NCBI GenBank assembly: GCA_965637545.1
Contig: OZ281495.1
Coordinates: forward strand, 11,842,001-11,906,000
Reading direction: 5' to 3'
Length of the DNA stretch: 64,000 bases
DNA from: Phallusia mammillata
Taxonomy: Eukaryota
This document shows, piece by piece, positions 34,398 to 64,000 of this stretch; within the stretch, counting starts at the first letter, position 1; every line of letters begins with the position of its first letter. Under the pieces are notes generated by a model. It was not told the DNA's origin. It saw nothing but the letters and a program-made list of their open reading frames with translations, and did no database searches. The position numbers were made by a program, and so were the translations under genes.

Positions 34398-35404
34398 ATG
34401 TATCTAGTCGGCACCGTTTTGCTAGCTACCACTGTAGCAGCCTCGTACCATATACAGAATCTCACCCAACAAAGCGGTAATGTGTTTTACACGTCAGTCC
34501 AGGATGACGTAATCTGGTCGTTCACTTGGGCTGAAAACAGAAGTGATGCATATCTGGTTCTTACTTCATTTACCTTTTTTGCGTTCAAATTCGGCGAAGG
34601 CTCGGTTGTTTTGCCGGACCGTAAGAATTTATTTTACTTTAACCCCTGTTTGTCAAATAAACAATGTAAATTGTTTCGATAGGTGTCGCTATCGCGCCCA
34701 ATTATTTCGCGTGGGGTACTGACTTGCCAGTTCATTGCGCGACTTATACCAAACCAAACTCCACCTGCAATGGCGACAATGATGACCTCAAGTTTAATTG
34801 TGACGTCCTTTCGAACATGATGTCAAGTACAGTTTGGCCACCAGCAATCAATTCAACATTGCGCAGGGCTGCTATCCAGTTTTCTTACTATTTTCACAAG
34901 TGTTCCAAACCAGAAACTTTTTCTGGTAGGTCTGGTTTTTTGTTGTTGTTGCTTATTATTTTTTTCATGAAACTTATTTTTATCAACATATTTTTTGTTA
35001 TGTATTTATTTTAGTCTGTTACAGCAAAAGAAAGCAAAGTTTGATTTAAGTTTCTTACAGTTTCGCCGTCTCAATCAAACAAAGTAGAAGAAAATGACAC
35101 TTCGCTTCTTTACGTGGTTGTGGCGTTGGCAGTTGGTAACCTTCTCTGGCTAACCTTGATCATATTTTGCGGGTATGTAACCACACTTCAAACAATCTTT
35201 TTAGTTTTTTTCACCACTTGTAATTTTAGATGTTGCCGAAAAAAGAAAAAGCAACCTCTTTCCGTGAATCCAATTGTAGAAGTGCGGACTACAACTGATG
35301 CTGCTACTCACAATATCTGTAACATAGTAGAGGACGCTTATGCATTTGCGGATAACGATGACAACTTAGAAAACAGTCAGGCTTACTTGACTGCTGCTCA
35401 CTGA
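34398..35404 (+). CDS. Orphan type I single-pass membrane protein, 250 aa; exons 34398-34620, 34683-34925, 35061-35172, 35230-35404
   Basis: Four exons join in phase (753 nt). Signal peptide MYLVGTVLLATTVAAS; ectodomain with 4 Cys and 5 N-x-S/T sequons; TM LLYVVVALAVGNLLWLTLIIFCG; stop-transfer CCRKKKK; tail with two Tyr. Confidence 0.75.
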
Positions 35405-38400
35405 GTTTACTGCTAACCTGCCAAAAAGCAAACCTTGCAAATTTTATTTAAAACTATGTGTCGATTTTACTGTCTGCATTGCCATTAGTCGGTAATAATA
35501 ATAATTAATCAACATTTTACTTTATAATTGTAAAAAGCGTATTTTTTGTTGCTACTCGCAAACAATATAAATGCACTGAAATCAGTTAATTTTTGGTAAA
35601 TTATCTAAAAAACGAATTAAAGTTTGTGAATAAAAACTACCAACAATCTCTGTTTTCAGGTTTATAAAGCTTCTAGACACTCCTGCCCTTATATGTTGTG
35701 TGCAAAAGACATTGCTATGATCACAAAATAAAAACACTGATGCTCGCCAAGAAGTTGCAACTTTATATTTTTTGTTTCAAAACTTATTTTTTGTAACCCA
35801 TTTTGCAATTAATGCCACATTCAACAACTTTACCAATAAAAATACGTTTTGGGTATAAAACAGTAAAACATGTGCAAGATATTCTGCGGTCGACTGTTTT
35901 TTTTTCTATTCTGCGATAAGAAAAATTGCTTTGACTGCAATTTTATAAAGCATGATACAAGTATTCGTTGTGGTGCAGGATATGATTTGTTTAAAGTTTG
36001 GAGTGCAAAAACCTCTGCGATTATGTAACGTTCTTGTAGATTAAAAACAACACTATACTGTATTGCGATGTTTGTAGATTTCTACCACGACTAAGCTAAA
36101 ATCACAAGTTTAAGTAAAACAAAATCACAAAGCATTTTAAAATAATTGAGGTTTATTTCGTTTCTAAATCATCGATCAAAAGTATGATCGTATAAATTAG
36201 GAGTCACATAGCTTTCAGTTTTCGTTGTCCATCACATCACCTGTTCCTTGGTTTTCATCTGCGACATAATCATTACTCTTGCGTTGCGTTTTTCCTGGTT
36301 CGCTGATGTCATCACGGTCTTCTGAACAGGTAAAATGTAAGCTACTTTTCAAAAATGTTAGTATGCCATACGTTAGACCAGTTGACCAATTAACTACCGT
36401 TTAACCTAGGTTTACCAGCATCACATTTCAAACCCTTTTTTAGTTTCAGAATACAACCGATATCCTTGTACGTCTTTCAACAGAAAAACACCCAACAAAA
36501 AGGCGACGAGAATGAACTTGTTCATCTGCAAAAAAAGCTTTAAGGTAAAATTTGAGCAATTCGTTTAATATGCTGTCGCACTTTCTTACACTTACTGCAT
36601 TGTGAAAACCGTTTCAAACATGGATAAAAACTGAAAAGTAGCACCTACCTTACGTTTTTGTTTGGAGTCGACCTGTTGCCACGACGTGCTTTATCGAAAC
36701 AGATTGTGTCGTTTTCAAACCCCCATCCAGATGTTTTACTTTTTCCTGTAGCTTCTTGTAACAGTTGCAATAAAAAACTGCAAAGGAAACAGTTTGTTTC
36801 CTCTTTCTGTTTTATTGTCCAGAGACTATGTTTTGTAGTAGAAAATGCGCGCGTTTGTTACCGCGGTGGCTATACGCTTTTATTGTACTAGTTGTTATCG
36901 TTACAACTGTTTTGCAGCACTATGAAGTATTGGACAAACTTTAAAAAACGAGACTTCTCCAAAGCACCGTCGCAGTTTTGTCAGTTATAACTTACTTAAT
37001 ATTGAAGCTGAAAAGTTAAAACGAAACATGGAATGCGGATTACAACCAACAACAAAAAAACATCGCTATAAGTATCCCCTTTGAGCTTGTTATTGGTTAA
37101 TAAATGTGTAGGTTACTACATGAGTTACATTTTTATGCTCAACGTGAGTTGCACAAATGTGAACATCTGCAGTCCGACAAGCGAACTTTGTGGTTCGGTT
37201 TACGTTTTTACTTTGATGTTTTCTCCATTTTTTGGTAATCTGAATAGAGTCATATTCATAAAAATCTTTGAAGTGTGTCTTTGGTTCGTTTGGTGTTAAA
37301 GCGTGTTGTATTTTTTTAATATTTAGTTTTGCAATTGGTTTTATTTTTGATTTGTTAAAAAAACTTTATGAACAGTGAAAGGGCTTGATTTTTATGCCAG
37401 GCCTTGTGTTTTCACTAATTTATTCACCAATATATGTACGCTTAGAAACAGCGCTTAAACATCGAGCAAAACGTTGAAAAGTGTGCAAATTGGAATTTTT
37501 TAAACATTTCAACGTTGTCACTGTTTGAAAACATGCATCAGAGTCAGTTCCAAGTTTCCCACGGAGAAACAGCTGCGGGTTCTCGACGTTTTGTCGTGCA
37601 TTCTAGGTTGTTGTCTGGGGTATCTTGATCGCTCTTGCGCGGCCGTTCCCCGGGCTCGCTCTCATAAGCAACGCGCTCATCTAAACAGGTAAAATGTAAG
37701 CTACGTTTTCAAAATTTTATCAATCCAAAACGTTAGACTAGTTGACTGATGAGCTACGATTTAAGTTTAAAAGCACCAAATTTCAAAACCTTTTCCAGCT
37801 CCATCCTCTTGACTTAGATCCTTGTCCATTTTTCACCAGAAAAATACCTAACAAGATGGCGACGAGAATTAACTTGTTCATCTGCCAAAAAGGTAAAATT
37901 TGAGCAATACGTCTGATTTGTTTGTCACACTTGCTAATACCATAAGCCATTGTAAAAAGGGTTTAAAGCACGAATTAAAAATTAAAACTTGCACATACCT
38001 TTTACGTTTGTGTTTGAATGTTGACCTGTTACGACGATGTGCTTTATTGGAGCAAATTGTGTTGCTTTTCAAACCCCTTATCCAGATGTTTTACTTTTTT
38101 CTCCTGTTTTTATGTAAAAACTGCAAAAGATCGAAAAGGAAACAGATTGTTTCTGTTCTCCGTTGCTTTTCACAAAACTGTATGTAACAGCTTGCAGCGA
38201 ATGGACGCGAGTTTGCTATTAATTCGTTAGAATTTTTCTGTGGAAATTTTTGATCACATGGGTCGTAAGTTATAGGGATCTCATTGCAAGTAAAAAAACA
38301 TGTGATTTATCGATTTTAGATTAAAAATTAGCCTTTGGTTTACCGCGACGAGATACACTTGTTTACCTGCAGGAAACCAAACTCGTTCAAATGTGAAAAT

Positions 38401-38864
38401 TTGTCGGACTTACTCATAGCAATGATTTATGAAATTCACACACAGTCCATGAATTAAAGTAAAAATATAGAAACATTGCTCACATTAATTTCTGGTCGTT
38501 TTACTCGACTTGTTACGACCATGTGCGTCCGTGGAACGGGTTGTGTTTCTATTCAAATCCTAAATCCAGATGCTTTGCTCTTTTCGGTGAAAAATATCGC
38601 AGTGAAAACAGAATATGTTTCCAGTCGAATCTGTCGTATGAAAGGATGCGCTGTTTCCGCATCAGTTACAGGATTTTTTTCGGCGCTTGGGGAAAGTAAA
38701 TTTACACGTCGAATTTTTTTCTTTTGTTACCACTTGATCCTGCTTTTTTCGAAGAAAAAACCGCTTTCTTGTTGAGTTTTCCAGTACTTTAAAAAGGCTG
38801 TCAAAAATGAATAGAAAACAAAACGAACACATGGTAATCCCCATAAGCATGGGCCAATTACGTT

Positions 38865-41630
38865 TTTTGGTAGGTTTTTTTTTACCATTTTTATGAAAAT
38901 CAAACGAAGTTTACAAACTGTCAAAATTCGTTGTGTACAAATTAAACATATTTTATTGTGTAATTTAGCTTGTTACAGAAAAAGAAGCCAATGTTTGATT
39001 GAAGTTTTTTTTCAGTTTCGCCGTCGAAATCAAACAAAGTAGAAGAAAATGACACTTTGCTTCTTTACGTGGTTGTTGCGTTGGCAGTTGGTAACCTTCT
39101 CTGGCTAACCTTGATCATATTTTGCGGGTATGTAACCACACTTCAAACAATCTTTTTAGTTTTTTTCACCACTTGTAATTTTAGATGTTGCCGTAAAAAG
39201 AACTAGCAACCTCTTTCCGTAAATCCAATGGTGGAAGTGCGGACTACAACTGATGTTCACAATATCTGTAACATAGTAGAGGACGCTTATGCGTTTGCTG
39301 ATAACGATGACAATTTAGAAAACAGGCAAACTAACTTGACTGCTGCCAACTGATTTTACTGCTAATTCCTGCCAACAAGCAAACCTTGCAATTTTTTTGA
39401 AAAAATGTTTATCGATTTTACTGTCTGTATTGTCATCAGTCAGTAATAATAATCATTAATCAACATTTTAATATGGTACTTTATAGTTGTAAAACGTGTC
39501 TTTTTGTTGCTACCCGCAAACAACATAAATGCACTGAAATCAGTTGATATAGAGAAAATCATCTAAAAAACGACTTTAAAAACTGGTGAATAACAACTAC
39601 CAATAATCTCTGTATGTTGGTTTATAAAGCTTTTAGCAACTCCTCCCATTGTTAGCACCAATGTTGTGTGCAAAGACATCGCTAATCACAAAGTAAAGAT
39701 ATGATATAACACTGACGCTCGCCAAGAAGTTGCCACTCTATATTTTATATTTCATAAACGTTTTTATGACCCATTTTGCGATTAATGTCACATGCAACAA
39801 CTTAACTATGTGAAAAGAACGTGTCGGGTTTGAAACAGCGTATACTACGGACAGCAAGTTTACGCCTTAGCAAACTTTGCAAGTGTGACCAAATAATCTG
39901 GTCATGCACAATAATGTTTTTTTGGACACTTTGTTTTCCTGATTTGGCACCATCACGTGCATTTCTTTTCTTTGGTGTTATTTGGTTTGTGGCACGTTGT
40001 TAGCATTCCCTCCCTTTGCCTGACGATTATGAAACAGCATTACGGACAGCAAGTACAGAATACCCCTTAAAAACATTGCAAGAAGTGACGATTTTTTGTT
40101 TGTTTTGCCTTTTTTTTTTAATTTTAGTGTTGTTGAATAATTTATGCACTAAACCGTAAAAATATCTGTAATATATTTTGCAGTTGACTGTTCTTTTTCT
40201 TCTGGTAGGAAAAAAATGCTTTAACTGCAAATTGGTGATTTAAGTTTAATTAAAGTTTTCGTTGTGGTATAAGATATGATTTGTTAAAGTTCTTGTAGAT
40301 TAAAAACAACACTATTGTATTGCATTGTTTGTAGATTTTTACCATGACTGAGACAAAATCGCTAGGTTAAAATAAAACAAAATCGCAAAGCATTTTGAGA
40401 TAATCGAGGTTTATTTCGTTGCCAAAATGATCGATCAGAAGTATGATCGTATAAATTAGGAGTCACATAGCTTTCAGTTTTCGTTGTTTATCACATCAGC
40501 TGTTCCTTGGTTTTCATCTGCGGCATAAACATCGCACTTACCCGGCGTTTTTCCGGGTTCGCTTTCATAAGCAACGCGGTCCTCTAAACATGTAAAATGT
40601 AAGCTTCTTGTCAAAAGTGTTAGTATGCTATACGTTACACCAGTTGACTGATTATCTACCGTTTAGCCTGGGTTTACCAGCATCACATTTGAAAACCTTT
40701 TACATAATCGATATCCTTTTCCGTCTTTCAACAGAAAAAACACCCAACAAGAGAGCGACGAGGATTAACTTTTTCATCTGAAAAAAAATGTTTGAGGTAA
40801 AATTTGAGCAATTCATCGGATGTGTTTGTCGCACTTGCTTACACTTACTGGCACTGTGAAAACCGTTTAAAACATCGATAAGAACTGAAAACTAGCACCT
40901 ACCTTACGTTTTTGTTTGGACATCTACCTGTTACGGTGATGTGCTTTATCAAAGCAGATTATGTTGCTTTTCAAACCCTTGCAGATGTTTTACTTTTTCC
41001 TGTAGCTTCTTTTAACAACTGCAATAGAAAAACCACAAAGGAAACAGTTTGTTTCCTCTTTCTGTTTTATTTTCCAAAGACTATGTTTTGTAACACCGAG
41101 TAGCAACTGGACGCGTTTGTTACCGCGGTGGTTAGGCCTATATGGTTTTATTGTAGTAGTTGTTATCGTTACAACTGTTTTGCAGCACTAAGTGTGGAAA
41201 AAACTTCAAAGGACGAGACTTATACAAAACACCGTCGCAGTTTTATCAGTTATAACTTACCTAATATTGAAGCTGAAAAGTTAAAACCAAACATGTAATG
41301 CGTATTACACCCAATAATCGCTACAAGTACCCCTTGATGCTTCTTATTGGTTAGTATATGTGTAGGTTACTGTATGAGATACATTTTTATACTCAACGTG
41401 AGTTGCACAAATGCGATCACCTGCAGTCCGACAAGCGAGCTTTGTGGTTCGGCTTACTTCTTTACTTTGATGTTTTCTCCATTTTTTGTTGATCTGAATA
41501 TAGTGTCATATTCACAAAAATCGTTAAAGTGTGTGTTGGGTCCGTCTGATGTAATAACGTGTTGTATTTTTTTCATATTTCGTTTTGCAATTTTTTTTGA
41601 TATGGTTGAAAAAGCTTTCTTAACGGTTTA
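38865..41630 (+). repeat. Segmental duplicate of ~34920-37375 (receptor intron 2 through its 3' flank and first array unit)
   Basis: Collinear similarity with an offset of ~3955 at the TM exon (35061 vs 39016), rising to ~4262 at the array anchor (36330 vs 40592) because of an extra ~0.3 kb near 39850-40165. Confidence 0.85.
39016..39353 (+). pseudogene. Partial copy (TM exon plus tail exon) of the orphan receptor with a premature stop
   Basis: Exons 39016-39127 and 39185-39353 keep their splice sites. AAA AAG AAA AAG has become AAA AAG AAC TAG (stop at 39204-39206). The signal-peptide and ectodomain exons are absent upstream. Confidence 0.75.
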
Positions 41631-44600
41631 GCAAACTTGCTAAGCAAAACCAGCAAAACGTGCAAAATAGGATTTGCTGAGCATATCAACGTTGTCACTA
41701 TTTGAAAACACGCATTACCCTATGGTTAAGAAGGACCTAATCTAATGTGTTATTTTGCAGTTGACCTGATGGAGCTTGGAACAGACCTAAATTATGATGA
41801 AAAAAACGCTTGAAGAACAATCTCATAAAGCATGGGCTATCGTTTTAGATGTGAAATAGAATAAGATTTAAGTCTGTTCAAGTTTGCCTTGCAGAAACAT
41901 TTGCCGGTTCGTGACTTTTGGTCGTATAGTATCCGCTGATCGTAAATAGCACTGCCTTGTAATGTTTGTAAATGACGGCGTTGTAGATTTATATCATGAA
42001 TGAGCTAAATTCCCAAACTTACAATACAACAAAATCACAAAGCTAATTGAGATAACCGAATTTATTACGATTGCAAGTCATCGATATCAGATGATTGGAT
42101 TTTTCTCGGCGCTTCGGTAAAGTAATGTTAACGCGTCGAAACAATATTTCTTTTGTTACTACTTGAGCCTGCTTTTTTCTAAGAAAAATCCACGTTCTTT
42201 GTTGTTGAGTTTGCCAGTACTTGGCAGTTAAAAAATGAATCGAAAAAACACGTAATTATTGGGATCCAACTGAAAACGAACTATCCCCATAAGCATTTGC
42301 TAATGTATCCCTATTGATTCGTTTGCAGGTTTTGCAAGGTATACTGTGGTCCATGATACATTTGTGGATTATACAGGGGTGCAGTTTCGGTTTTGGTTAA
42401 TTAATTTGATGTGTTTAATTAGGTATTGTTGATGCTTAGTCAAGCGTGTCTGCATTGTGATGCTTGTAACTGACGGCGTTGTAGATTTCTATCATGAATG
42501 AGCTAAATGCCCAAGAATGGTGGTTATATGCTTTTATTGTACTGGTTGTTATCGTTACAACCGTTTTGTCACACTATAAAGTGTAGAAAAAACGAGCGTT
42601 CTACAAAACACTTTTGCAGTTTTGTCAGTTATAACTTACTTAATATTGGACCTGAAAAGTAAAAACAAAACTTGTAATAGGGAATACACCCTACAACACA
42701 AGGACACATAGCTATAAGTATCCTCTTTGGGCTTCCTATTGGTTAATGTATGTGTGGGTTACTATATATGAGGTACATTTTTATACCCAACGTGAGTTGC
42801 AGAAATGCCAACATGTGCCGTCCGACAAGCGAGCTTTGCGGTTCTACAAAATTTTATCAATGTCAGATGCCAAACAAGTTAACTAGTGAACTACGATTTA
42901 ATTGCAACGGGCCCGATTTGCAGAACCCATTCCATCTCCGTCATGAAGTTGTGTTTGTCCGTCTTTCACCAGCAAAATACCAAACAAGATAGCGACGAGA
43001 ATTAACTTGTTCATCTGCCAAAAAGGTTAAATTTGAGCGGTACGTCTGATTTGTTTGTCACACTTGCTAATACCATGGCATTGTGAAAAGGGTTTGGGAC
43101 GGGCCTGATATAATATGTTATTATGATGGAGCTTGGAACAGACCTAAATCATGATGGACAAACGCTCGAATAGCAATCTCATAAAGCATGGGCAATCGTT
43201 TTAGGTGGGTGTAAAATAGTATATGATTTAATTTTATTACTAGTTTCTCATGCAGAATCAGTTGCGGGTTCGTGACGTTTGGTCGAATAGTCATCGCTGA
43301 TCAAAAACAGCATTGCATTGTAATGTTTGTAAATGAAAACGCTGCAGATTTCTTTCATGAATGAGCTGAATTCCCAAAGTAAAAAAAAACAAAATCACAA
43401 AGCTAATTGAGATAATTGAAGTTTATTACGATTGCAAGTCATCGATTATCCGATGATCGCGTACGTTAGGAGTCACACCGCCTTCAATTTTCGTTGTCCA
43501 ACACTTCACCTGTTCCGCGGTTGTCCCCTGGGGGGTAGTTATCGCTCTTGTGTGGCCGTTCCCCGGGTTCGCTCTCATAAGCAACGCGTTCATCTAAAAA
43601 GGTAAAATGTAAGCTACTTTTCAAAAAAAAATTCTCAATGCCAGACGTTAGATTAGTTGACTAATGAACTGTGATGTAATTGCAAAGGGCCCAAATTGCA
43701 AAACCTTTTCCATCTCCGTCAGGAAATTGTCCTTGTCCGTTTTTCACCAGAAAAATACCTAACAAGATGGCGACCAGAAGTAACTTGTTCATCTGCCAAA
43801 AACGTAAAGTTAAGCAATACGTGCGATTTGTTTGTCACACTTGCTAATACCCAAGGTATTGTGAAAAGGGCTTAAAGCACAGAGAAAAACTAAAAACTAC
43901 CACCTACCTTACGTTTCTGTTTAGATGTCGACGTGTTACGACGATGTGCTTTTTTGCAGCAAATTGTGTTGCTTTTCAAACCCTTATCCAGATGTTTTTA
44001 TTTTTCTCTCCTGTTTTCATGTAAAAAAACTGCAAAAGACCGAAAAGGAAACGGATTGTTTCTGTTCTCCGTCGCTTTTCACAAAACTGTCTGTAACAAC
44101 TTGTAGAGAATGGACGCGAGTTTGTTATTACTTTGATAGAAGTTTTATGTGGAAATTTTCTATTATGTTGCTCATTTAAGTTGAGGGATCTCACTGCAAG
44201 TAAAAACCACGTGATTTGTCGTTTTAAGATTCAATATTTTAGCGTTTGGTTTACGGCGATACACCTGTTCACCTGCAGGAAATATATTTATAGCCAACCT
44301 CGTTTAAAAAGTGAAAATTTGTCGAACCTGCTCATAGCAATGATTGATGAAAATCACACACAGTCTATTAAAAACCGGTAAAATATAAAACCACTAATCA
44401 CATTAATTTCTTGTCGTTTTAGTCGACTTGTTACGACCATGTGCTTTTTGGAACTCTCTTTTCGGTGAAAAATGTCGCAGTGAAAACCGAATGTTTCCAG
44501 ACGAATCTGTCGCATGAATGGACGCGGTGTTTCCGCATAAGTTACAGAATTTTTCTCGGCGCTTGGTTAAAGTAACGTTAACACGCCGAAACAATATATG

Positions 44601-46508
44601 TTTTGTTACAACTTGTTCCTGCTATTTTCGAAGAAAACCACATGTGCTTTGTTGTTGAGTTTTGCACTACTTTCCAATAAAAAGGCAATTAAAAATGAAA
44701 AAAAGCACGTGATCTGTTTGGATCCAATAGAAAACGAACACGTGGCTATCCCCATAAGCATTTGCACAGAAAAAGGGCTTTGTCTTTATGCTAGGCTGCT
44801 TGTTTTTATCGGTTTTGCACGAATATAATATCTTAACGTTTACAAACGACGCCTAAACATCGAGCAAAATGTTGAAAAGCAAAACGTGCAAAGTAGGATT
44901 TTTTTAACATTTCAACGTTGTCACAATTTGAAAACACGCATTATCCTATGGTTGGGACGGCCTTGATCTAATATGTTAATTTGCAGTTGCGTGATGGAGC
45001 TTGGAACAGACCTAAATTATAATGGACAAACGGTCGAACAGCAATCTTAAAAAGCATGGGCTACCGTTTCAGTTGTGAAATAGGATAGGATTTAAATATG
45101 TTCAAAGTTTGTCGTGCAGAATCAGTTGCGGGTTTGCAACGTTTAGTCGCATAGTCTTCGCTGATCATAAACAGCAATGCCGTGTAATGGTTGTAAGTTA
45201 CGACGCTATTGATTTCTATTATGAATTAGAAAAATTTGAACAAAATCACAAAGCTAATTTAGATAATCGAAGTTTATCACGAATGCAAGTCATCGATTAA
45301 CGGATAATCGCGTATGTTAGGAGTCACGCCGCCTTCAGTTTTCGTTGTCCATCACATCACTTGTTTCCTGGTTGTCTTTTGGGGTATAATTGTCCCTCTT
45401 GGGCGGCCGTTCCCCGGGTTCGCTCTCATAAGCAACGCGTTCATCTAAACAGGTAAAATGTAAGCTACTTTTCAAAATACTTTATCAATGCCAAACGTTA
45501 GATTGGTTGAGCGATAAACTACGGTTTAAGTTTGAAAGCACTAAATTTCAAAACCTTTTCCAGCTCCATCATACAATTTGACTCCTTGTCCGTCTTTCAC
45601 CAGAAAAATACCTAACAAGATGGCGACGAGAAGTAACTTGTTCATCTGCCAAAAAGGTAAAATTTGAATAATACGTCTGATCTGTTTGTCACACTTGCTA
45701 ATACCCAGGCATTGTGAAAGGGTTTAAAGCACAGAGAAAAACTAAAAACTACCACCTACCTTACGTTTCTATTTGGATGTCGACCTGTTACGACGATGTG
45801 CTTTCTTGGAGCAAATTGTGTTGCTTTTCAAACCTTCATCCAGATGTGTTTACTTTTTTCTCCTGTTTTCATGTAAAAAACTGCAAAAGACCGAAAAGGA
45901 AACGGATTATTTCTGTTCTCCGTCGCTTTTCACAAAACTTTGTTGTGCAACAGCTTGTAGAGAATGGACGCGAGTTTGTTATTACTTCGATAGAAGTTTT
46001 ATGTGGAAATTTTCTATTATGTTGCTCATTTAAGTTGAGGGGATCTCATTGCAAGTAAAAACCACGTGATTTATCTTTGTAAGATTCAATATTTTAGCGT
46101 TTGGTTTACGGCGATACACTTGTTCACCTGCAGGAAATATATTTATAAGCCAAACTCGTTTAAAAAGTGAAAATTTGTCGAACCTGCTCATAGCAAAAAA
46201 ATAATTTCTTGTCGTTATATTCGACTTGTTACGACCATGTGCTTTTTGGAACCGGTTGTGTTGCTATTCAAATCCTTAATCCAGATTCTTTGCTCTTTTC
46301 GGTAAAAAATTTTGCAGTGAAAACATATAGTGCTTCCATTTGAATCTGTCGAACAACTGGACGCGCTGTTTCCGCATCAGTTACAGGATTTTTCTCACCG
46401 CTTGGGTAAAGTAATTTTAACGCGTTGAAACAATATTCTTTTTGTTGCCAATTGATCCTAGTTTTTACGAAGAAAACCCCACGTTCCTTGTTGTTGAGTT
46501 TTCCTTTG

Positions 46509-47626
46509 GGGCGGCATTACGAACACATCTCGCTAAGTTTAGCGAGCTCGGTATTGACGCACGAACTCGTTAAGTTGAGATTTGGTATTACGAACCCCCG
46601 TCTCGCTAACCGGACCTAAACTCCTCGCTAACTACGAAGACCTCAGACCACTCGCTAACGCCAAATTGTTGTTGACAAAGTCACACAGTCACGTCGGAAA
46701 TCAATTGTGGCTACGTATTATGCTGGTAAAAGTTTGTACAAACGAAGAAAAATTGTAAATGTCGGTTTTAATTTAATTTTAAAATGGCGTTTGCGAAGAA
46801 TAACTGTATTGGATTGATGCCATCAATTCACGAGGATTTACACATTTTCCAGTTAAAATAAGTTGCAAAAAATCCGGTAAAAAGTATCTGATGCTGGAAG
46901 AACAAGTCCTTATTATATACTTCCGTGTGCGCAATACAGTTTAAGAAATCTAATTTGGGCAAACACAACATTTAAGCCATTGTACCAACCGTCCGTGTGG
47001 TAGTGACTCAAAGTTGTTTACACCCTGCATATTTTCTTTCAGCACTCTAGATATAAGATGAACGTGTCAAGATAGGTTGTTTTTATTGATCACAGTAGTT
47101 ATTTTGTGTTAAATTTATAACATTGTCATGTATTTTTTAGTTTTTTAAATACTTGTCCGTTTTGAAGCACCAACGTTTTCTTTTAATAAAAAATATACCA
47201 AAAGATGTTTTGCACCTTTTCTAAGATATGAAACTTCCATTTCAACTGTTGTCCACGTTTCAATAAATTCTTGCAATGTTTCTTGATGTTCTTATGCTAC
47301 TTTATCAAATAAACAAATTCCAAGCTGTCCGTAAATTAGGAAATCCAAACATTTTGAGGTTATATTGCAAATTTACATTAAAAACAGCATAAATGACAGG
47401 CGAAAATTGTTTGTCGCAAGGTGTCGCATAGCGCGGCGTGACGATTTTGCTGAGTCAGACGTCTTTTTTCTTACGATTTTGACGCATTCTCTCGTATTTG
47501 CGCCAGGCTTTCGCGAGGCGTTTGCGAGGACACTTTGTAATACCAAATACTTTACCGAGTTCCTCGCTCGTTAAGTCCTCGCTAAAGATGTTTTTACCGA
47601 GCGAGGAAGTGTTCATAATGCTGCCC
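46509..47626. mobile_element. Non-autonomous TIR element, PIF/Harbinger-like, inserted in an array unit
   Basis: TIRs GGGCGGCATTACGAACAC / GTGTTCATAATGCTGCCC; 3-bp flanks TTG / TAG; multiple subterminal CTCGCTAA motifs; absent at the equivalent position of sister units. Confidence 0.7.
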
Positions 47627-50600
47627 TAGTACTTTGAAAGTGCACTTAAAAAATGAATAAAAAACATGTATTTGAATAAAAAAAATGAATAAAAAACATG
47701 ATTTGGGGTGTTTAATTAGGTATTTTTGATGCTTAGTCAAGCGTGTCTACATACTTTGTTTAAAATCCTAAAACACTTCACCGTGCCATGCAGAAACATA
47801 TGCGTGTTCGTGACGTTTTGTCGTATAGTCTTACTGATCATAACAGCACTACATTGTAATGTTTGTAAATGACGGCGTTGTAGATTTTTTTCAAGAATGA
47901 TCTAAATTCCCAAAGTTAAAATGAAACAAAATCACAAAGTTATTTTAGAAAATCGAAGTTTATTACGATTGCAAGTCATCGATTAACGGATGATTGCGTA
48001 GGTTAGAAGTCACACCGCCTTCAGTTTTCATTATCCCACCAACCATCTGATTCCTGGATGTCCTTTTGGGGAGAGTTATCGCTCTTGTGTGGCCGTGGAC
48101 CGGGTTCGCTCTCATAAGCAACGCGTTCATCTAACCAGGTAAAATGTAAGCTACTTTTCAAAATACTTTATCAATGCCAAACGTTACATTAGTTGAGCGA
48201 TGAACTACGGTTTAAGTTTAAAAGCACCAAATTTCAAAACCTTTTCCAGCTTCATCCTCTGACTTAGATCCTTGTCCGTCTTTCACAAGAAAAATACCCA
48301 CCAAGATGGCGACCAGAAGTAACTTGTTCATCTGCCAAAAAGGTAAAATTTGAGCAATACGTCTGATCTGTTTGTCACACTTGCTAATACCCAGGCATTG
48401 TGAAAAGGGCTTGAAGCACGGAGAAAACTGAAAACTAGAACCTACCTTACGTTTCAGTTTGGATGTCGACGTGTTACGACGATGTGCTTTATTGGAGTAA
48501 ATTGTGTTGCTTTTAAAACCCCTTATCCAGATGTTTTACTTTTTTCTTCTGCTTTCACGTAAAAAACTGCAAAGGAACGGAAAGGAAACAGATTGTTTCT
48601 GTTCTCCGTCGATTTTCACAAAACTACCTTTAACAGCTTGTAGCGAATGGACGCGAGTTTGTTACTACTTTGTTTGATTTTTTTGTGGAAATTTTCTGTT
48701 ACATGGGTCCTAATTTGAAGAGATCTCATTGCAAGTGAAACCATACAATTTATCGTTTTTAGATTCAATTTTTTTAGTCTTTGGTTTACGGCGACGGGAT
48801 ACACGTGTTCACATGCAGGAAAATTATTTCACCCAACTCGTTCAAAAATGAAAATGTGTTTGCTCATAGCAATGATTTATGAAAATCACACACAGTCTAT
48901 GAATAACCGGTAAAATATAAAACCACAACTCACATTAATTTCTGGTCGTTTTATTCGATTTGTTAAGACCATTTGCTTCCATGGAACAGGTTGTGTTGCT
49001 ATTCAAATCCTAAATCCAGATGCTTTGCTCCTTTCGTTGAAAAACATCGCAGTGAAAATGTTTCCAGTCGAATCTGTCGTATGAATCGACGCGCTGTTTC
49101 CGCATCAGTTACAGGATTTTTCTCGGCGCTTGGGTAAAGTAATGTTAACGCGTCAAAACAATATTTTTTTTATGCCACTTGATCCTGCTTTTTTCGAAGA
49201 AAAACCCACGTTCTGCTCTGTTGTTGAGTTTGCCAGTACTTGTCAGTTAAAAAAATGAATAGAAAACAACACGTAATTTGTTTGTATCCAACAGAAAACG
49301 AATACGTGGCTATGCCCATAATCATGTGCCAGTGTCTCCCTACTGATTCGTTCGCAGGTTTGGCAAGGTATACTGTGGTCCATGATAGATTTGTTGAATA
49401 CAGACGTCCAACTTCGGTTTTGTTTAATTGATTTGGGGTGTTTAATTACGTATTTTTGATACTTAGTCAAGCGTGTCTACATACTTTGTCACTTCACCGT
49501 GCCATGCAGAAACATATGCGTGTTCGTGACGTTTTGTCGTATAGTCTTGGCTGATCATAACAGCACTACATTGTAATGTTTGTAAATGACGGCGTTGTAG
49601 ATTTCTATCAAGAATGATCTAAATTCCCAAAGTTAAAATAAAACAAAATCACAAAATTATTTCAGAAAATCGAAGTTTATTACGATTGCAAGTCATTGAT
49701 TATCAGATGATCGCGTACGTTAGAAGTCACACCGCCTTCAGTTTTCATTATCCCACCAACCATCTGATTCCTGGATGTCCTTTTGGGGAGAGTTATCGCT
49801 CTTGTGTGGTCGTGGACCGGGTTCGCTCTCATAAGCAACGCGTTCATCTAAAAAGGTAAAATGTAAGCTACTTTTCAAAATACTTTATCAATGCCAAACG
49901 TTACATTAGTTGAGCGATGAACTACGGTTTAAGTTTAAAAGCACCAAATTTCAAAACCTTTTCCAGCTCCATCCTCTGACTTAGATCCTTGTCCGTCTTT
50001 CACCAGAAAAATACCCACCAAGATGGCGACCAGAAGTAACTTGTTCATCTGCCAAAAAGGTAAAATTTGAGCAATACGTCTGATCTGTTTGTCACACTTG
50101 CTAATACCCAGGCATTGTGAAAAGGGCTTGAAGCACGGAGAAAACTGAAAACTAGAACCTACCTTACGTTTCAGTTTGGATGTCGACGTGTTACGACGAT
50201 GTGCTTTATTGGAGTAAATTGTGTTGCTTTTAAAACCCCTTATCCAGATGTTTTACTTTTTTCTTCTGCTTTCACGTAAAAACTGCAAAGGAACGGAAAG
50301 GAAACAGATTGTTTCTGTTCTCCGTTGCTTTTCACAAAACTACCTTTAACAGCTTGTAGCGAATGGACGCGAGTTTGTTACTACTTTGTTTGATTTTTTT
50401 GTGGAAATTTTCTGTTACATGGGTCCTAATTTGAAAAGATCTCATTGCAAGTGAAACCATACAATTTATCGTTTTTAGATTCAATTTTTTTAGTCTTTGG
50501 TTTACGGCGACGGGATACACGTGTTCACATGCAGGAAAATTATTTCACCCAACTCGTTCAAAAATGAAAATGTGTCGAATTTGCTCATAGCAATGATTTA

Positions 50601-53600
50601 TGAAAATCACGCACAGTCTATGAATAACCGGTAAAATATAAAACCACAACTCACATTAATTTCTGGTCGTTTTATTCGATTTGTTAAGACCATTTGCTTC
50701 CATGGAACAGGTTGTGTTGCTATTCAAATCCTAAATCCAGATGTTTTGCTCCTTTCGTTGAAAAACATCGCAGTGAAAATGTTTCCAGTCGAATCTGTCG
50801 TATGAATGGACGCGCTGTTTCCGCATCAGTTACAGGATTTTTCTCGGCGCTTGGGTAAAGTAATGTTAACGCGTCAAAACAATATTTTTTTATGCCACTT
50901 GATCCTGCTTTTTTCGAAGAAAAACCCACGTTCTGCTCTGTTGTTGAGTTTGCCAGTACTTGTCAGTTAAAAAAATGAATAGAAAACAACAAGTAATTTG
51001 TTTGTATCCAACAGAAAACGAATACGTGGCTATGCCCATAATCATGTGCCAGTGTCTCCCTACTGATTCGTTCGCAGGTTTGGCAAGGTATACTGTGGTC
51101 CATGATAGATTTGTTGAATACAGACGTCCAACTTCGGTTTTGTTTAATTGATTTGGGGTGTTTAATTACGTATTTTTGATACTTAGTCAAGCGTGTCTAC
51201 ATACTTTGTCACTTCACCGTGCCATGCAGAAACATATGCGTGTTCGTGACGTTTTGTCGTATAGTCTTGGCTGATCATAACAGCACTACATTGTAATGTT
51301 TGTAAATGACGGCGTTGTAGATTTCTATCAAGAATGATCTAAATTCCCAAAGTTAAAATAAAACAAAATCACAAAATTATTTCAGAAAATCGAAGTTTAT
51401 TACGATTGCAAGTCATTGATTATCAGATGATCGCGTACGTTAGAAGTCACACCGCCTTCAGTTTTCATTATCCCACCAACCATCTGATTCCTGGATGTCC
51501 TTTTGGGGAGAGTTATCGCTCTTGTGTGGTCGTGGACCGGGTTCGCTCTCATAAGCAACGCGTTCATCTAAAAAGGTAAAATGTAAGCTACTTTTCAAAA
51601 TACTTTATCAATGCCAAACGTTACATTAGTTGAGCGATGAACTACGGTTTAAGTTTGAAAGCACCAAATTTCAAAACCTTTTCCATCTCCATCCTCTGAC
51701 TTAGATCCTTGTCCGTCTTTCACCAGAAAAATACCCACCAAGATGGCGACGAAAAGTAACTTGTTCATCTGCCAAAAAGGTAAAATTTGAATAATACGTC
51801 TGATCTGTTTGTCACACTTGCTAATACCATAAGGCATTGTAAAAAGGGTTTAAGGAACGAAGAAAAACTGAAAACTAGCACCTACCTTACGTTTCTATTT
51901 GGATGTCGACGTGTTACGACGATGTGCTTTATTGGAGTAAATTGTGTTGCTTTTAAAACCCCTTATCCAGATGATTTACTTTTTTCTCCTGTTTTCATGC
52001 AAAAAACTGCAAAAGACCGACAAGGAAACAGATTGTTTCTGTTCTCCGTTGCTTTTCACAAAACTACCTTTAACAGCTTGTAGCGAATGGACGCGAGTTT
52101 GTTATTACTTTGTTTGAGTTTTTGTTTGTGGAAATTTTCTATTACATGAGTCCTAATTTGAAGGGATCTCATTGCAAGTGAAACCATATAATTTATCGTT
52201 TTTTGATTCAATTTTTTTAGTCTTTGGTTTACGGCGCGGGATACACGTGTTCCCATGCAGGAAATATATTTATAACCCAACTCGTTCAAAAATGAAAATG
52301 TGTCGAATTTGCTCATAGCAATGATTTATGAAAATCACACACGATATATTAATTACCGGTAAAATATAAAACCACAACTCACATTAATTTCTGGTCGTTT
52401 TATTCGATTTGTTAAGACCATTTGCTTCCATGGAACGGGTTGTGTTGATATTCAAATCGTAAATCCAGATGCTTGGCTCTTTTCATTGAAAAACATCGCA
52501 GTGAAATGTTTCCAGTCGAATCTGTCGTATGAATGGACGCGCTGTTTCCGCATCAGTTACAGGATTTTTCTCGACGCTTGAGTAAAGTAATTTTAACGCG
52601 TCGAAACAATATTTCTTTTGTTACCAATTGATCCGGCTTTTTTCGAAGAAAAACCCACGTTCTGCTCTGTTGTTGAGTTTTCCAGTACTTTGAAGGGGCA
52701 GTTAAGAAATGAATAGAAAACAACACGTAATTTGTTTGTATCCAACAGAAAACGAACACGTGGCTATGCCCATAAGCATGTGCCGGTGTCTCCCTACTGA
52801 TTCGTTCGCAGGTTTGGCAAGGTATACTGTGGTCCATGATAGATTTGTTGAATACAGACGTCCAACTTCGGTTTTGGTTAATTGATTTGGGGTGTTTAAT
52901 TAGGTATTTTTGATGCATAGTCAAGCGTGTCTACATACTTTGTTTAAAATCCTAAAACACTTACACTTCACCGTGCCATGCAGAAACATATGCGTGTTCG
53001 TGACGTTTTGTCGTATAGTCTTGGCTGATCATAACAGCACTACATTGTAATGTTTGTAAAGACGGCGTTGTAGATTTCTATCAAGAATGAGCTAAATTCC
53101 CAAAGTTAAAATAAAACAAAATCACAAAGCTCATTGAGATAACCGAATTTATTACGATTGCAAGTCATCGATTATCAGATGATCGCGTACGTTAAGAGTC
53201 ACACTGCCTTCAGTTTTCGTTTTCCAACCCTTCTTCTGTTCCCCGGTTGTCATCTGGGGGAGAGTTATCGCTCTTGTGTGGTCGTGGACCGGGTTCGCTC
53301 TCATAAGCAACGCGTTCATCTAACCAGGTAAAATGTAAGCTACTTTTCCAAATACTTATTAATGCCAAACGTTAGATTAGTTGAGCGATGAACTACGGTT
53401 TAAGTTTAAAAGCACCAAATTTTGAAACCTTTTCCATCTCCATCCTCTGACTTAGATCCTTGTCCGTCTTTCACAAGAAAAATACCCACCAAGATGGCGA
53501 CCAGAAGTAACTTGTTCATCTGCCAAAAGGTAAAATTTGAGCAATACGTCTGATCTGTTTGTCACACTTGCTAATACCAAGGCATTGTGAAAAGTGTTTA

Positions 53601-53940
53601 AACCACAGAGAAAAACTGAAAACTTGCACCTACCTTACGTTTCAGTTTGGATGTCGACGTGTTACGACGATGTGCTTTATTGGAGTAAATTGTGTTGCTT
53701 TTAAAACCCCTTATCCAGATGTTTTACTTTTTTCTCCTGTTTTCATGTAAAAACTGCAAAAGACCGAAAAGGAAACAGATTGTTTCTGTTCTCCGTTGCT
53801 TTTCACAAAACTACCTTTAACAGCTTGTAGCGAATGGACGTGAGTTTGTTACTACTTTGTTTGAGTTTTTGTTTGTGGAAATTTTCTATTACATGAGTCC
53901 TAATTTGAAGGGATCTCATTGCAAGTGAAACCATATAATT

Positions 53941-54235
53941 CAGGGGTGGGCAACCTGCGGCCCGCGGGCCACATGCGGCCCTTGATTAAAGGTTGTGCGA
54001 CCCGCGAAGTCGCTTGGACTCCCAATGTACTGGCAAACAAGTCCAATTATTATATATTTTTGAGCAGATTAGTGCGCCTGTGCTATTTTTCTACGATTTG
54101 GCAATATGCTGCGAGAATCAAATACGAATTCTACTTGTAGTAAGGCATTTTTAATATGCAACGAAGTAAAATCATTTTGTGTTATATAAAGGTGCGGCCC
54201 GCGATCCCCACAGTGAAAAAGGTTGCCCACTCCTG
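53941..54235. mobile_element. hAT/Charlie MITE with a perfect 8-bp TSD in the last array unit
   Basis: TIRs CAGGGGTGGGCAAC / GTTGCCCACTCCTG; TSD ATATAATT at 53933-53940 and 54236-54243; the empty site CCATATAATTTATCG is seen in the sister unit near 52185. Confidence 0.92.
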
Positions 54236-54859
54236 ATATAATTTATCGTTTTTAGATTCAATTTTTTTAGTCTTTGGTTTACGGCGACGGGATACACGTG
54301 TTCACATGCAGGAAAAATATTTTTACCCAACTCGTTCAAAAATGAAAATGTGTTTGCTCATAGCAATGATTTATGAAAATCACACACGGTATATTACCGG
54401 TTAAATATAAAACCACAACTCACATTAATTTCTGGTCGTTTTATTCGATTTGTTAAGACCATTTGCTTCCATGAAACAGGTTGTGTTGCTATTCAAATCG
54501 TAAATCCAGATGCTTTGCTCCTTTCGTTGAAAAACATCGCAGTGAAAATGTTTCCAGTCGAATCTGTCGTATGAATGGACGCGCTGTTTCCCCATCAGTT
54601 ACAGGATTTTTGGCGTTTGAGTAAAGTAATTTTAACGCGTCGAAACAATATTTCTTTTGTTACTACTTGATCCTGATTTTTTCGAAGAAAAACCCCATGT
54701 GCATTGTTGCTAAGTTTTCCAGTGTTTGTCTGTTAAAACAAATGAGTAGTAATCAACACGTAATTTGTTTGGATCCAACAGAAAACGAACACGTGGCTAT
54801 GCCCATAGGCTGAGTATGCCCCTATTGATTCGTTTGTAGGTTTTGCAAGGTATACCGGT

Positions 54860-55034
54860 CAGTGGTGGGATTCATTTTGTCAGCCGTTCTATCAAAAAAG
54901 TCATATTTTTCAGCCGGTTCTGTTACAAAAAGTCCGTTGACAGTAACCAGTAACACTAACCGTTTCGCTGATCCCATAAAATTTCGTGGGACGGTTCTAT
55001 AGAACCGGTTCGAACCGGCTGAATCCCACCACTG
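54860..55034. mobile_element. Small hAT-type MITE
   Basis: Perfect 14-bp TIRs CAGTGGTGGGATTC / GAATCCCACCACTG; interrupts the GGTATACTGTGGT site of sister units; left TSD degenerate. Confidence 0.8.
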
Positions 55035-55753
55035 ACTGTGGTTCATTATACATTTGTGGACTACAGAGGTGCAACTTCGGTTTTGATTTAGGGTGTTTAA
55101 TTGTGTATTGTTGATGCCTAGACAAGCGTATCTGAATACTTTGTTTAAAAACCTGGAACACTTACATTTCACCGTTAAATGTCCCTTGTTTGTCAATTAC
55201 TGAAATCGTATGCTTATGGGCCAATGTAGATTTCAGTAATTTATGTTTTGTCATAATAATCCTATTTTAGGTTTCTTTTGAAGTTTGTGTTATACTTCTT
55301 AAAATTGAACTTTTTAGCCCAGCTATGAGCGTTGTAATCCCAAGATACACAAACACATATACGCCAGCGTGGGTTGGATAAACGTACTAATTTTTTTCGG
55401 CTTGTTACTCTTGACCGGGGTAAACTTACGATTTAAAGTATACCTGGCACAGTTTGTAGGCTTTTATGAAAACAGCATCCTAGCTGCTTTGAGTGAACAG
55501 CACTTTACCATTGCGCACAAGAGCACAATGGCTGAGACTGTTAAATCGTACATGCTGATCTTGTTACACAACCCGGGATCCAGTTTCAAACGCTATTGTT
55601 ATCCCACGCCCGACCTCTATGCGCAATACCACAGTACAAGCAGTAATATTACCAAATGCCATCCAGTACTTTTCCTGTAGAAGTTAGCTTTTCAGTGGCA
55701 GCTTTTATAAGTGCCTGTTTGTGACGTGATAACAGATCATTGACGCGATAAAC

Positions 55754-63927: not shown

Positions 63928-64000
63928 GTAAGTTACTGTGGCAATTATGTTTCCTATCAATAGGGGGTTTCATAATATCTTTCTACAAAAACGCATGCAA

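What the first reader, a model, noticed from the sequence alone, without database searches (positions are those of the whole stretch)
36060..55180. 19-kb tandem array whose units look like small spliced transcription units without a conserved ORF
Seen: each unit has the same ordered signals. (1) CTTCAGTTTTC (Inr-like TCAGTT, also readable as an acceptor) about 115 nt before (2) a GTAAAATGTAAG donor, with GT kept in 9/9 copies. (3) A 143-154-nt intron-like spacer ending in a pyrimidine tract and AG. (4) A micro-exon followed by a second GT donor. (5) A further conserved (T/C)(C/G)CAG acceptor candidate (CCTTATCCAG; e.g. ~38083, ~45843, ~50248). Downstream ORFs are broken by T/A-run frameshifts that differ between copies. 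Inference: this is an amplified family of lncRNA or small-ORF genes, a long poly-exonic non-coding transcript (possibly a small-RNA/piRNA source), or an amplified decaying gene 5' end. It does not resemble a simple satellite or any TE family I recognise. Caveat: two-base signals can persist by shared ancestry without selection.
Basis: partly seen in the sequence, partly recalled or inferred. Interest (0 to 1): 0.75.

Follow-up and report, generated by a model that had tools for sequence, protein, structure and literature searches.

The report
Tandem genes for small secreted peptides

Summary
The tandem array is real. It has ten units between about 35.0 and 55.2 kb, 72-98% identical to each other, and it occurs only at this locus in the 240-Mb genome.

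On the minus strand each unit is a compact gene:
- a leader exon ending in a conserved GTAAGGTAGGT donor;
- a CAG acceptor directly before the ATG;
- a 91-nt exon encoding a classic signal peptide;
- a 109-113-nt phase-1 intron;
- a 110-nt last coding exon ending in ..NEN-stop;
- AATAAA 56-58 nt after the stop, followed by a T/GT-rich element.

Its "Inr-like" motif overlaps the stop codon. Its "micro-exon" is the signal-peptide exon.

Six copies keep the frame, and their coding exons differ in length only by multiples of three. Four copies are broken or partial. The signal peptide is the most conserved part. The mature peptide is the least conserved and diverges faster than the flanking introns.

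No homologue was found in Pfam, the word search, the 1.84-billion-protein HMM search or the Atlas. No RNA evidence could be obtained. The verdict is a lineage-restricted family of secreted-peptide genes: a new member of a known kind, of modest interest.

The parts
35007..55175 (-). Whole tandem array. It has ten units with a 1.72-kb period at the young end (c1-c4) and a 4.26-kb higher-order repeat at the old end (pairs c10+c9 and c8+c7).
53210..53519 (-). Gene c1, intact, from ATG to stop. Exon 53519-53429, intron 53428-53320, exon 53319-53210. Its C-terminal part resembles that of c6 (mosaic).
51458..51768 (-). Gene c2, intact. Exons 51768-51678 and 51567-51458.
50168..50282 (-). Reference copy c3: putative non-coding leader exon. 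It is preceded by TGCAG and ends at a donor block AAAC|GTAAGGTAGGT that is nearly invariant in 9 of 9 copies. The transcription start is unknown.
   Evidence: sequence grammar only; no RNA evidence
50049..50167 (-). c3 leader intron. It ends in CAAATTTTACC-T(n)-GGCAG directly before the ATG. The AG is kept in 9 of 9 copies.
49958..50048 (-). c3 coding exon 1 (91 nt, ends in phase 1). It encodes a signal peptide of about 21 residues plus the start of the mature peptide.
49848..49957 (-). c3 coding intron (110 nt, GT..AG).
49738..49847 (-). c3 last coding exon (110 nt including TGA at 49740-49738). It encodes the acidic mature peptide, which ends in ..NEN.
49676..49681 (-). c3 AATAAA poly(A) signal, 56 nt after the stop and followed by a conserved TTTGTGATTTTGTTTT-like element. 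AATAAA is present at +56 to +58 in 7 of 8 copies.
48021..48331 (-). Gene c4, intact. Exons 48331-48241 and 48130-48021.
45335..45645 (-). Gene c5, intact. Exons 45645-45555 and 45444-45335. Its poly(A) signal is the variant GATAAA.
43484..43792 (-). Gene c6, intact. Exons 43792-43705 (88 nt, with an in-frame 3-nt deletion) and 43593-43484.
42927..43014 (-). c7: fragment holding the signal-peptide exon only. It has no last exon, and the unit is rearranged.
40474..40777 (-). c8: pseudogene. Its exon 1 is 81 nt and out of phase. Its exon 2 ORF is still open.
37628..37881 (-). c9: pseudogene. It has a 1-nt insertion in exon 1, and its unit is truncated inside exon 2.
36215..36525 (-). c10: oldest subtype. 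The ORF is open, but the exon-1 donor has changed from GT to GG, so the next GT shifts the frame. It is probably a pseudogene.
46510..47690 (.). Insertion of a dispersed repeat, an internally deleted transposable element with dozens of copies genome-wide. It lengthens the c5-c4 spacer.

Best explanation
The array is a locally amplified, lineage-restricted gene family on the minus strand. Each unit is a gene of about 0.6 kb with three exons: a non-coding leader, a signal-peptide exon, and a last exon with a stop codon, AATAAA and a downstream element. The predicted product is a 65-66-residue pre-peptide. After removal of a signal peptide of about 21 residues it would leave a secreted 44-45-residue peptide that has no cysteine, is strongly acidic (pI about 4.3, net charge -5 to -8) and is probably disordered. 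Six copies (c1-c6) look functional and four (c7-c10) are decayed.

Shown directly: the gene grammar, frame preservation, the conserved signal peptide against the fast-diverging mature part, confinement to one locus, and the lack of detectable homologues.

Inferred: the genes are transcribed and translated, and the pattern (tandem amplification, conserved export signal, rapidly changing secreted part, birth and death of copies) reflects a role at an interface with other organisms or cells. Candidate roles are defence/immune or mucosal/tunic secretion, or gamete interaction. I put about 0.75 on 'expressed secreted-peptide genes on the minus strand' and only about 0.3-0.35 on the defence-type role.
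For: - All ten units carry ATG plus a signal-peptide-like exon on the - strand, with a maximum 12-residue hydropathy of 3.3-3.4 and small residues at -3/-1 (G-Q-G).
- The splice sites are canonical and phase-compatible. The coding intron is 109-113 nt, and the joined frame ends at the same ..NEN-stop in 8 of 9 last exons.
- Coding-exon lengths change only in frame. Exon 1 is 91 nt in c1-c5 and 88 nt in c6. Exon 2 is exactly 110 nt in 7 copies and 107 nt in c10, although the best alignments of the C-terminal part need several small indels that cancel out.
- Introns and UTRs carry many indels: 14-42 gap columns per feature against the old copies.
- Identity to c3 by feature: signal peptide 0.95 (c5, c6) and 0.85 (c8, c10); introns 0.88-0.91 and 0.80-0.81; mature-coding parts 0.68-0.70 and 0.53.
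- The mature part diverges faster than introns plus 3'UTR: Fisher P=1.3e-5 for c3 against c5 and 1.5e-5 for c3 against c10.
- Signal-peptide dN is 0.00-0.065; mature-peptide dN is 0.22-0.26 between subtypes.
- AATAAA lies at +56 to +58 after the stop in 7 of 8 copies, followed by a conserved T/GT-rich element.
- The leader donor block and the CAG|ATG acceptor are invariant in 9 of 9 copies.
- The family occurs only at this locus.
- The exon-2 peptide is predicted to have no secondary structure (pTM 0.14, mean pLDDT 64).
Against: - There is no transcript evidence. The only runs holding the stretch (X1, X2) are DNA-like unitigs covering introns and spacers without splice joints. Two runs guessed to be RNA from the same species label (X3, X8) held nothing.
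- No homologue was found in any database, so there is no cross-species conservation to support coding.
- dN/dS between subtypes is 0.3-0.55, not above 1. It exceeds 1 only in c1 against c2-c4 (whole CDS 1.0-1.6; mature part 1.5-2.4). There the differences look imported by recombination from a c6-like copy.
- Gene conversion of introns could inflate the contrast between exon and intron.
- dS in the mature part is also high.
- The leader exon and transcription start are grammar-only, and some copies carry a short upstream ORF in the leader.
Confidence: 0.75

Rival explanations
1. The array is a dead or dying gene family. The units descend from a secreted-peptide gene, but the array is now silent or non-functional, and the fast divergence of the mature part is relaxed constraint rather than selection.
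For: Four of the ten copies are clearly broken. No RNA evidence was obtained. dN/dS is about 0.4-0.5 with high dS in the mature part. There are no homologues.
Against: Six copies that differ by up to 24% in the mature-coding part have no stop and no frameshift. Their exon lengths are identical or differ in frame, while neighbouring introns and UTRs carry indels. The signal peptide, splice sites, stop context and AATAAA are kept better than the surrounding sequence. Neutral decay would not make the exon diverge 2-3 times faster than both flanking introns.
Confidence: 0.13
2. The units are plus-strand spliced non-coding (lncRNA or poly-exonic) transcription units, with a GTAAAATGTAAG donor, an intron of about 150 nt and a micro-exon.
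For: The + strand GT and AG dinucleotides are conserved in 9 of 9 copies.
Against: Each of those motifs is fully accounted for by a minus-strand feature: stop codon, branch/pyrimidine tracts, signal-peptide codons. The + strand 'acceptor' lies inside a conserved Leu codon. The + strand has no ORF, no poly(A) signal logic and no independent support. The pattern of conservation follows minus-strand codons and exon lengths.
Confidence: 0.03
3. The array is a small-RNA (piRNA-type) source locus or a long read-through transcript covering the array. In this reading the ORFs are incidental.
For: A tandem, locus-restricted array carrying a transposable-element insertion is a plausible substrate for such a locus. 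Nothing here tests small RNAs.
Against: It does not explain the signal peptide, the phase-compatible introns, the in-frame-only length changes, or the per-unit AATAAA and downstream element. The units are all in one orientation and each carries complete gene grammar.
Confidence: 0.05

Closest known systems
[quoted passage not shown]
   Same: Both are short secreted peptides with a highly conserved signal region and a much more variable mature part. Both are multi-copy, lineage-restricted families with gene birth and death.
   Different: MgCRP-I peptides are cysteine-rich with six invariant Cys. The peptides here have no cysteine, are strongly acidic and are predicted to be unstructured. There is no sequence similarity.
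Ascidian antimicrobial peptide precursors such as styelin-like botryllin and the Ciona linear cationic peptides (PMC9966394 and PMC7387483, abstracts seen)
   Same: Both are small signal-peptide-bearing precursors from tunicates. From my own knowledge, many of these precursors carry an anionic extension.
   Different: Those precursors contain a cationic, amphipathic mature peptide. Here the whole post-signal part is anionic (net -5 to -8) with no cationic helix and no conserved dibasic processing site. No similarity was detected.
Tandem clusters of short immune-induced secreted peptides in other invertebrates, such as Drosophila Bomanins and C. elegans nlp/cnc clusters (from my own knowledge, not checked here)
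   Same: Both are tightly packed tandem arrays of genes with two or three exons for peptides under 100 residues, restricted to one lineage, with copy turnover.
   Different: Induction by infection is the defining property of those clusters and is untested here. There is no sequence relationship.

Membership tests
Protein-coding gene for a secreted peptide (generic eukaryotic gene grammar) | N-terminal signal peptide: a charged n-region, a hydrophobic core of at least 10 residues, and small residues at -3/-1 | tested here: met
   The n-region is M-N-K and the hydrophobic core has 12-13 residues (12-residue hydropathy 3.3-3.4). G-Q-G precedes the predicted cleavage site. This holds in all six intact copies and is recognisable in all ten. 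The assessment is heuristic; no SignalP run was available.
Protein-coding gene for a secreted peptide (generic eukaryotic gene grammar) | Canonical GT..AG introns whose phase joins the exons into one open frame | tested here: met
   The coding intron is phase 1 and 109-113 nt, with GT and AG in c1-c6, c8 and c9. The donor is mutated in c10.
Protein-coding gene for a secreted peptide (generic eukaryotic gene grammar) | Frame preserved among diverged paralogues, with only in-frame length changes | tested here: met
   Exon 1 is 91 nt in five copies and 88 nt in c6. Exon 2 is 110 nt in seven copies and 107 nt in c10. Introns and UTRs carry indels.
Protein-coding gene for a secreted peptide (generic eukaryotic gene grammar) | Poly(A) signal and downstream element after the stop | tested here: met
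   AATAAA lies at +56 to +58 in 7 of 8 copies, followed by a conserved T/GT-rich block.
Protein-coding gene for a secreted peptide (generic eukaryotic gene grammar) | Transcription and splicing observed | tested here: inconclusive
   Only DNA-like unitigs cover the stretch. Two possible RNA runs held nothing.
Cationic antimicrobial peptide precursors (ascidian styelin/clavanin/Ci-MAM type) | A cationic amphipathic mature peptide | tested here: not met
   The mature part has pI 4.27-4.42 and net charge -5.2 to -8.4. No helix is predicted.
Cysteine-rich secreted peptide families (MgCRP-I, defensin-like, vanabin-like) | A conserved cysteine framework | tested here: not met
   There are no cysteines in any of the six intact mature peptides.
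Dispersed transposable element or satellite | Many copies dispersed in the genome (transposable element), or short non-genic head-to-tail units (satellite) | tested here: not met
   All 19 matches of the unit lie at C2:11.878-11.897 Mb. TRF finds no short-period array. The units carry gene grammar.
Any Pfam or other known protein family | Significant profile or sequence match | tested here: not met
   Pfam gave no match. The word search gave none. The HMM profile against 1.84 billion representatives gave only three hits, in long (503-3085 aa) multi-stretch proteins; the two inspected were a repeat-translation artefact and a zinc-finger linker. The Atlas gave only unnamed clusters at chance-level recognition.

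The most novel reading that the evidence does not exclude
The array encodes an undescribed, sea-squirt-restricted family of secreted anionic, disordered peptides whose mature part is being actively diversified. The evidence for diversification is threefold: substitution rates at both synonymous and non-synonymous sites exceed those of the flanking introns; small indels compensate each other so that exon length is kept; and C-terminal modules are swapped between copies. If true, this would be a new effector class for tunicate defence or for self/non-self or gamete recognition.
Probability: 0.25. Interest if true: 0.5.

Novelty: new member of a known kind. Interest (0 to 1): 0.3.

Why it matters
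The main value is corrective. A feature flagged as a possibly new class of spliced non-coding unit is an ordinary, though unannotated-looking and orphan, family of small secreted-peptide genes read on the wrong strand. If the genes are expressed, the family adds a cysteine-free, anionic member to the poorly known repertoire of tunicate secreted peptides. It would also offer a compact natural example of a conserved export signal paired with a fast-changing payload. It does not open a long-standing question.

Tried and rejected
- **RNA support.** The look-up of sequencing runs and read laying gave no usable RNA. X1 and X2 behave as DNA, and X3 and X8 were empty. I draw no conclusion about expression from this.
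- **Homology.** All four searches were blank or artefactual: the word search with the 46-residue exon-2 ORF, an HMM profile of eight exon-2 peptides against 1.84 billion representatives, the ESM Atlas and Pfam. A 35-residue, low-complexity, fast-evolving query has little power, and the libraries are poor in tunicates. Absence of hits is therefore weak evidence of true orphan status.
- **Joined protein.** It was only translated inside scripts for description. This also ruled out exact-sequence look-ups in transcriptome-derived protein sets and junction-pattern searches.
- **Promoter.** They are not kept in the oldest copies, so I make no promoter claim.
- **Other readings rejected.** I considered and rejected a transposable element, a satellite, exon cassettes of one large gene (each unit has its own stop and poly(A) signal) and a fragment of a larger parent gene (no other copy in the genome).
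- **Formal tests of positive selection.** I did not attempt them. There are too few sequences, and recombination between copies is evident.
Full report
**Observation**

TRF finds no short-period repeat, but seed-and-extend repeat finding and a BLASTN of one unit against the window show a long-period array. Units start at about 36072, 37628, 40329, 41885/42847 (rearranged), 43297, 45161, 47834, 49551, 51271 and 53025. They are 72-98% identical to the reference unit 49551-51270.

The four youngest units (c1-c4) have a 1.72-1.75-kb period. At the old end the spacing 36184 to 40443 (4259 nt), together with a duplicate of 35007-35863 inside the array, shows a 4.26-kb higher-order repeat made of an old-type unit plus a young-type unit.

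The unit is not dispersed. All 19 matches in the 240-Mb assembly fall at C2:11,878,072-11,897,144, which is this array.

**What the motifs are**

Reading the minus strand resolves them. Family D16 contains ..AAGATGGCGAC.., whose reverse complement is part of an ATG-initiated hydrophobic stretch. Scripts then recovered the same gene model in every unit. Coordinates below are for reference copy c3.

| Feature | Coordinates (c3) | Detail |
|---|---|---|
| Leader exon | about 50282-50168 | Ends at AAAC\|GTAAGGTAGGT, nearly invariant in 9 of 9 copies |
| Leader intron | 50167-50049 | Ends in CAAATTTTACC, a T-run and CAG directly before the ATG |
| Coding exon 1 | 50048-49958 | 91 nt, phase 1 |
| Coding intron | 49957-49848 | 110 nt, GT..AG, with CTTACATTTTAC and a pyrimidine tract |
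| Last coding exon | 49847-49738 | 110 nt, TGA stop |
| Poly(A) signal | 49681-49676 | AATAAA, followed by a conserved T/GT-rich block |

- CTTCAGTTTTC (49736-49746) overlaps the stop codon and the last two codons.
- GTAAAATGTAAG is the reverse complement of the branch/pyrimidine tract.
- The + strand 'acceptor' at 50006 sits in a Leu codon of the signal peptide.
- The 'micro-exon with ATG GCG AC' of the sibling note s1-395796 is the signal-peptide exon read backwards.
- The second 'donor' GTAAAATTTGAG is the end of the leader intron.
- CCTTATCCAG lies in the leader/promoter region.

**Coding evidence**

Six copies (ATG at 53519, 51768, 50048, 48331, 45645 and 43792) join into open frames of 65-66 codons ending at the same ..NEN-stop. 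The other four are degraded:
- c7 (43014) is an exon-1-only fragment.
- c8 (40777) has an 81-nt exon 1 that is out of phase.
- c9 (37881) has a 1-nt insertion and is truncated.
- c10 (36525) has its donor changed from GT to GG.

Coding-exon lengths change only in frame. Exon 1 is 91 nt, or 88 nt in c6. Exon 2 is exactly 110 nt in seven copies and 107 nt in c10, even though the best nucleotide alignments of the C-terminal 15 codons between subtypes need several small indels that cancel out. Introns and UTRs carry many indels.

By feature, identity to c3 is highest in the signal-peptide codons (0.95 for c5/c6, 0.85 for c8/c10). It is intermediate in introns (0.88-0.91 and 0.80-0.81). It is lowest in the mature-peptide codons (0.68-0.70 and 0.53). 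The excess divergence of the mature part over introns plus 3'UTR is significant in several, non-independent, pairs (P about 1e-5).

dN in the signal peptide is 0.00-0.065, against 0.22-0.26 in the mature part between subtypes. I do not claim formal positive selection, for three reasons:
- dN/dS between subtypes is 0.3-0.55, and dS is also high.
- Values above 1 occur only for c1 against c2-c4. There c1's C-terminal module is c6-like, which points to recombination between copies.
- Gene conversion of introns could contribute to the contrast. However, the short hypervariable stretch at the end of exon 1 is flanked on both sides by well-conserved sequence, which conversion tracts do not easily explain.

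**The product**

The predicted signal peptide has a K in the n-region, a 12-13-residue hydrophobic core and G-Q-G before the likely cleavage site. The remaining 44-45 residues have:
- no cysteine;
- 12-14 D+E against 5-7 K+R;
- pI 4.27-4.42;
- GRAVY about -2.

Invariant positions in exon 2 are few: R2, S-E-P-G at 7-10, K15 and the terminal N-E-N. AlphaFold on the eight-sequence exon-2 alignment gives no secondary structure and pTM 0.14, consistent with disorder.

**Relatives**

None were found. The word search, Pfam, the Atlas and an HMM profile against 1.84 billion representatives gave nothing real. The profile search returned three hits, all in long (503-3085 aa) multi-stretch proteins; the two I inspected were a repeat translation and a zinc-finger linker. 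Within the genome the profile and the signal-peptide exon hit only this locus. The power of these searches is low for so short and variable a query, and tunicates are thinly represented in the libraries.

It was translated only inside scripts.

**Expression**

Expression was not testable. The two runs that hold the stretch (X1, X2) give short unitigs over exons, introns and spacers alike, with no splice joints, so they are DNA. Two runs of the same species label guessed to be RNA (X3, X8) held nothing. This is no evidence of silence, because an adult tissue-specific or induced gene would be missed.

**Context**

Earlier notes of the scan say the genome is a sea squirt's (not verified here). 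The array lies between two + strand genes. One ends near 35.4 kb in a single-pass membrane-protein exon, part of which was swept into the array's higher-order duplication at 39057-39206. The other, from about 57.9 kb, is an alpha2delta-like gene whose exons hit VWA_N, VWA and Cache. Further upstream are LRR, arrestin-domain and CALHM exons. The c5-c4 spacer carries a dispersed, internally deleted transposable element.

**Interpretation**

The best-supported reading is a birth-and-death tandem family of lineage-restricted secreted-peptide genes on the minus strand. The combination seen here is, in other invertebrates, typical of defence or recognition effectors such as MgCRP-I in mussels (PMC4558851). 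That combination is a conserved export signal, a fast-changing cysteine-free acidic payload, local amplification and module exchange between copies. That functional step is inference only. The peptides fail the defining features of cationic antimicrobial peptides and of cysteine-rich families. I therefore file them as a new member of the general kind ('orphan tandem secreted-peptide family'), not as a member of any named family.

**Verdict**

Interest is modest (0.3).

Noticed in passing
window 46510-47690: The enlarged spacer between c5 and c4 is an insertion of a dispersed repeat. Its two halves (1-655 and 650-1120) occur dozens of times in the genome at 87-97% identity, usually 0.7-2 kb apart, so this copy is an internally deleted element of an unclassified transposable-element family.
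   Followed up: partly
window 35007-35863 and 38960-39840; ORFs 35114-35404 (+) and 39057-39206 (+): The old end of the array is a 4.26-kb higher-order repeat. It has also duplicated part of the last exon of the neighbouring + strand gene, a single-pass transmembrane segment followed by a basic stretch. The copy at 39057-39206 is truncated.
   Followed up: partly
window 39884-40022: An element of about 140 nt has at least 38 copies across the genome at 77-91% identity, often in pairs about 1.5 kb apart. It looks like a MITE or the terminal repeat of a transposable element.
   Followed up: no
window 47900-53890 (runs X1, X2): DNA unitigs from another sample show joints that skip 1765, 3444 or 3485 nt (one or two units), or go back 3445 nt. 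One joint carries 28 extra letters. This may be copy-number or arrangement polymorphism of the array, or merely k-mer graph paths through paralogues.
   Followed up: no
window 50650-50760 versus 50170-50283 (and the same offsets in c1, c2, c4): Young units carry an internal duplicate (74% identity over 81 nt) of the leader-exon region about 490 nt further upstream. It also ends in a GT donor (GTGAGT). It may be an alternative leader exon or promoter, or a decayed duplicate.
   Followed up: no
window about 50300-50320 (minus strand) and equivalents: A palindromic block GAAACA-N3-TGTTTC lies just upstream of the leader exon. It is nearly invariant in all nine copies, including those only 72% identical overall, and is a candidate regulatory element.
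   Followed up: no
window 55754-64000 (+): Exons with VWA_N, VWA and Cache-domain similarity appear in order, consistent with a calcium-channel alpha2delta-like gene. A second VWA_N-like exon at 63064-63363 may indicate a duplicated exon or a second gene.
   Followed up: partly
window 53941-54235: A 296-nt insertion, absent from c2-c4, lies in the upstream spacer of c1. Its origin was not examined.
   Followed up: no
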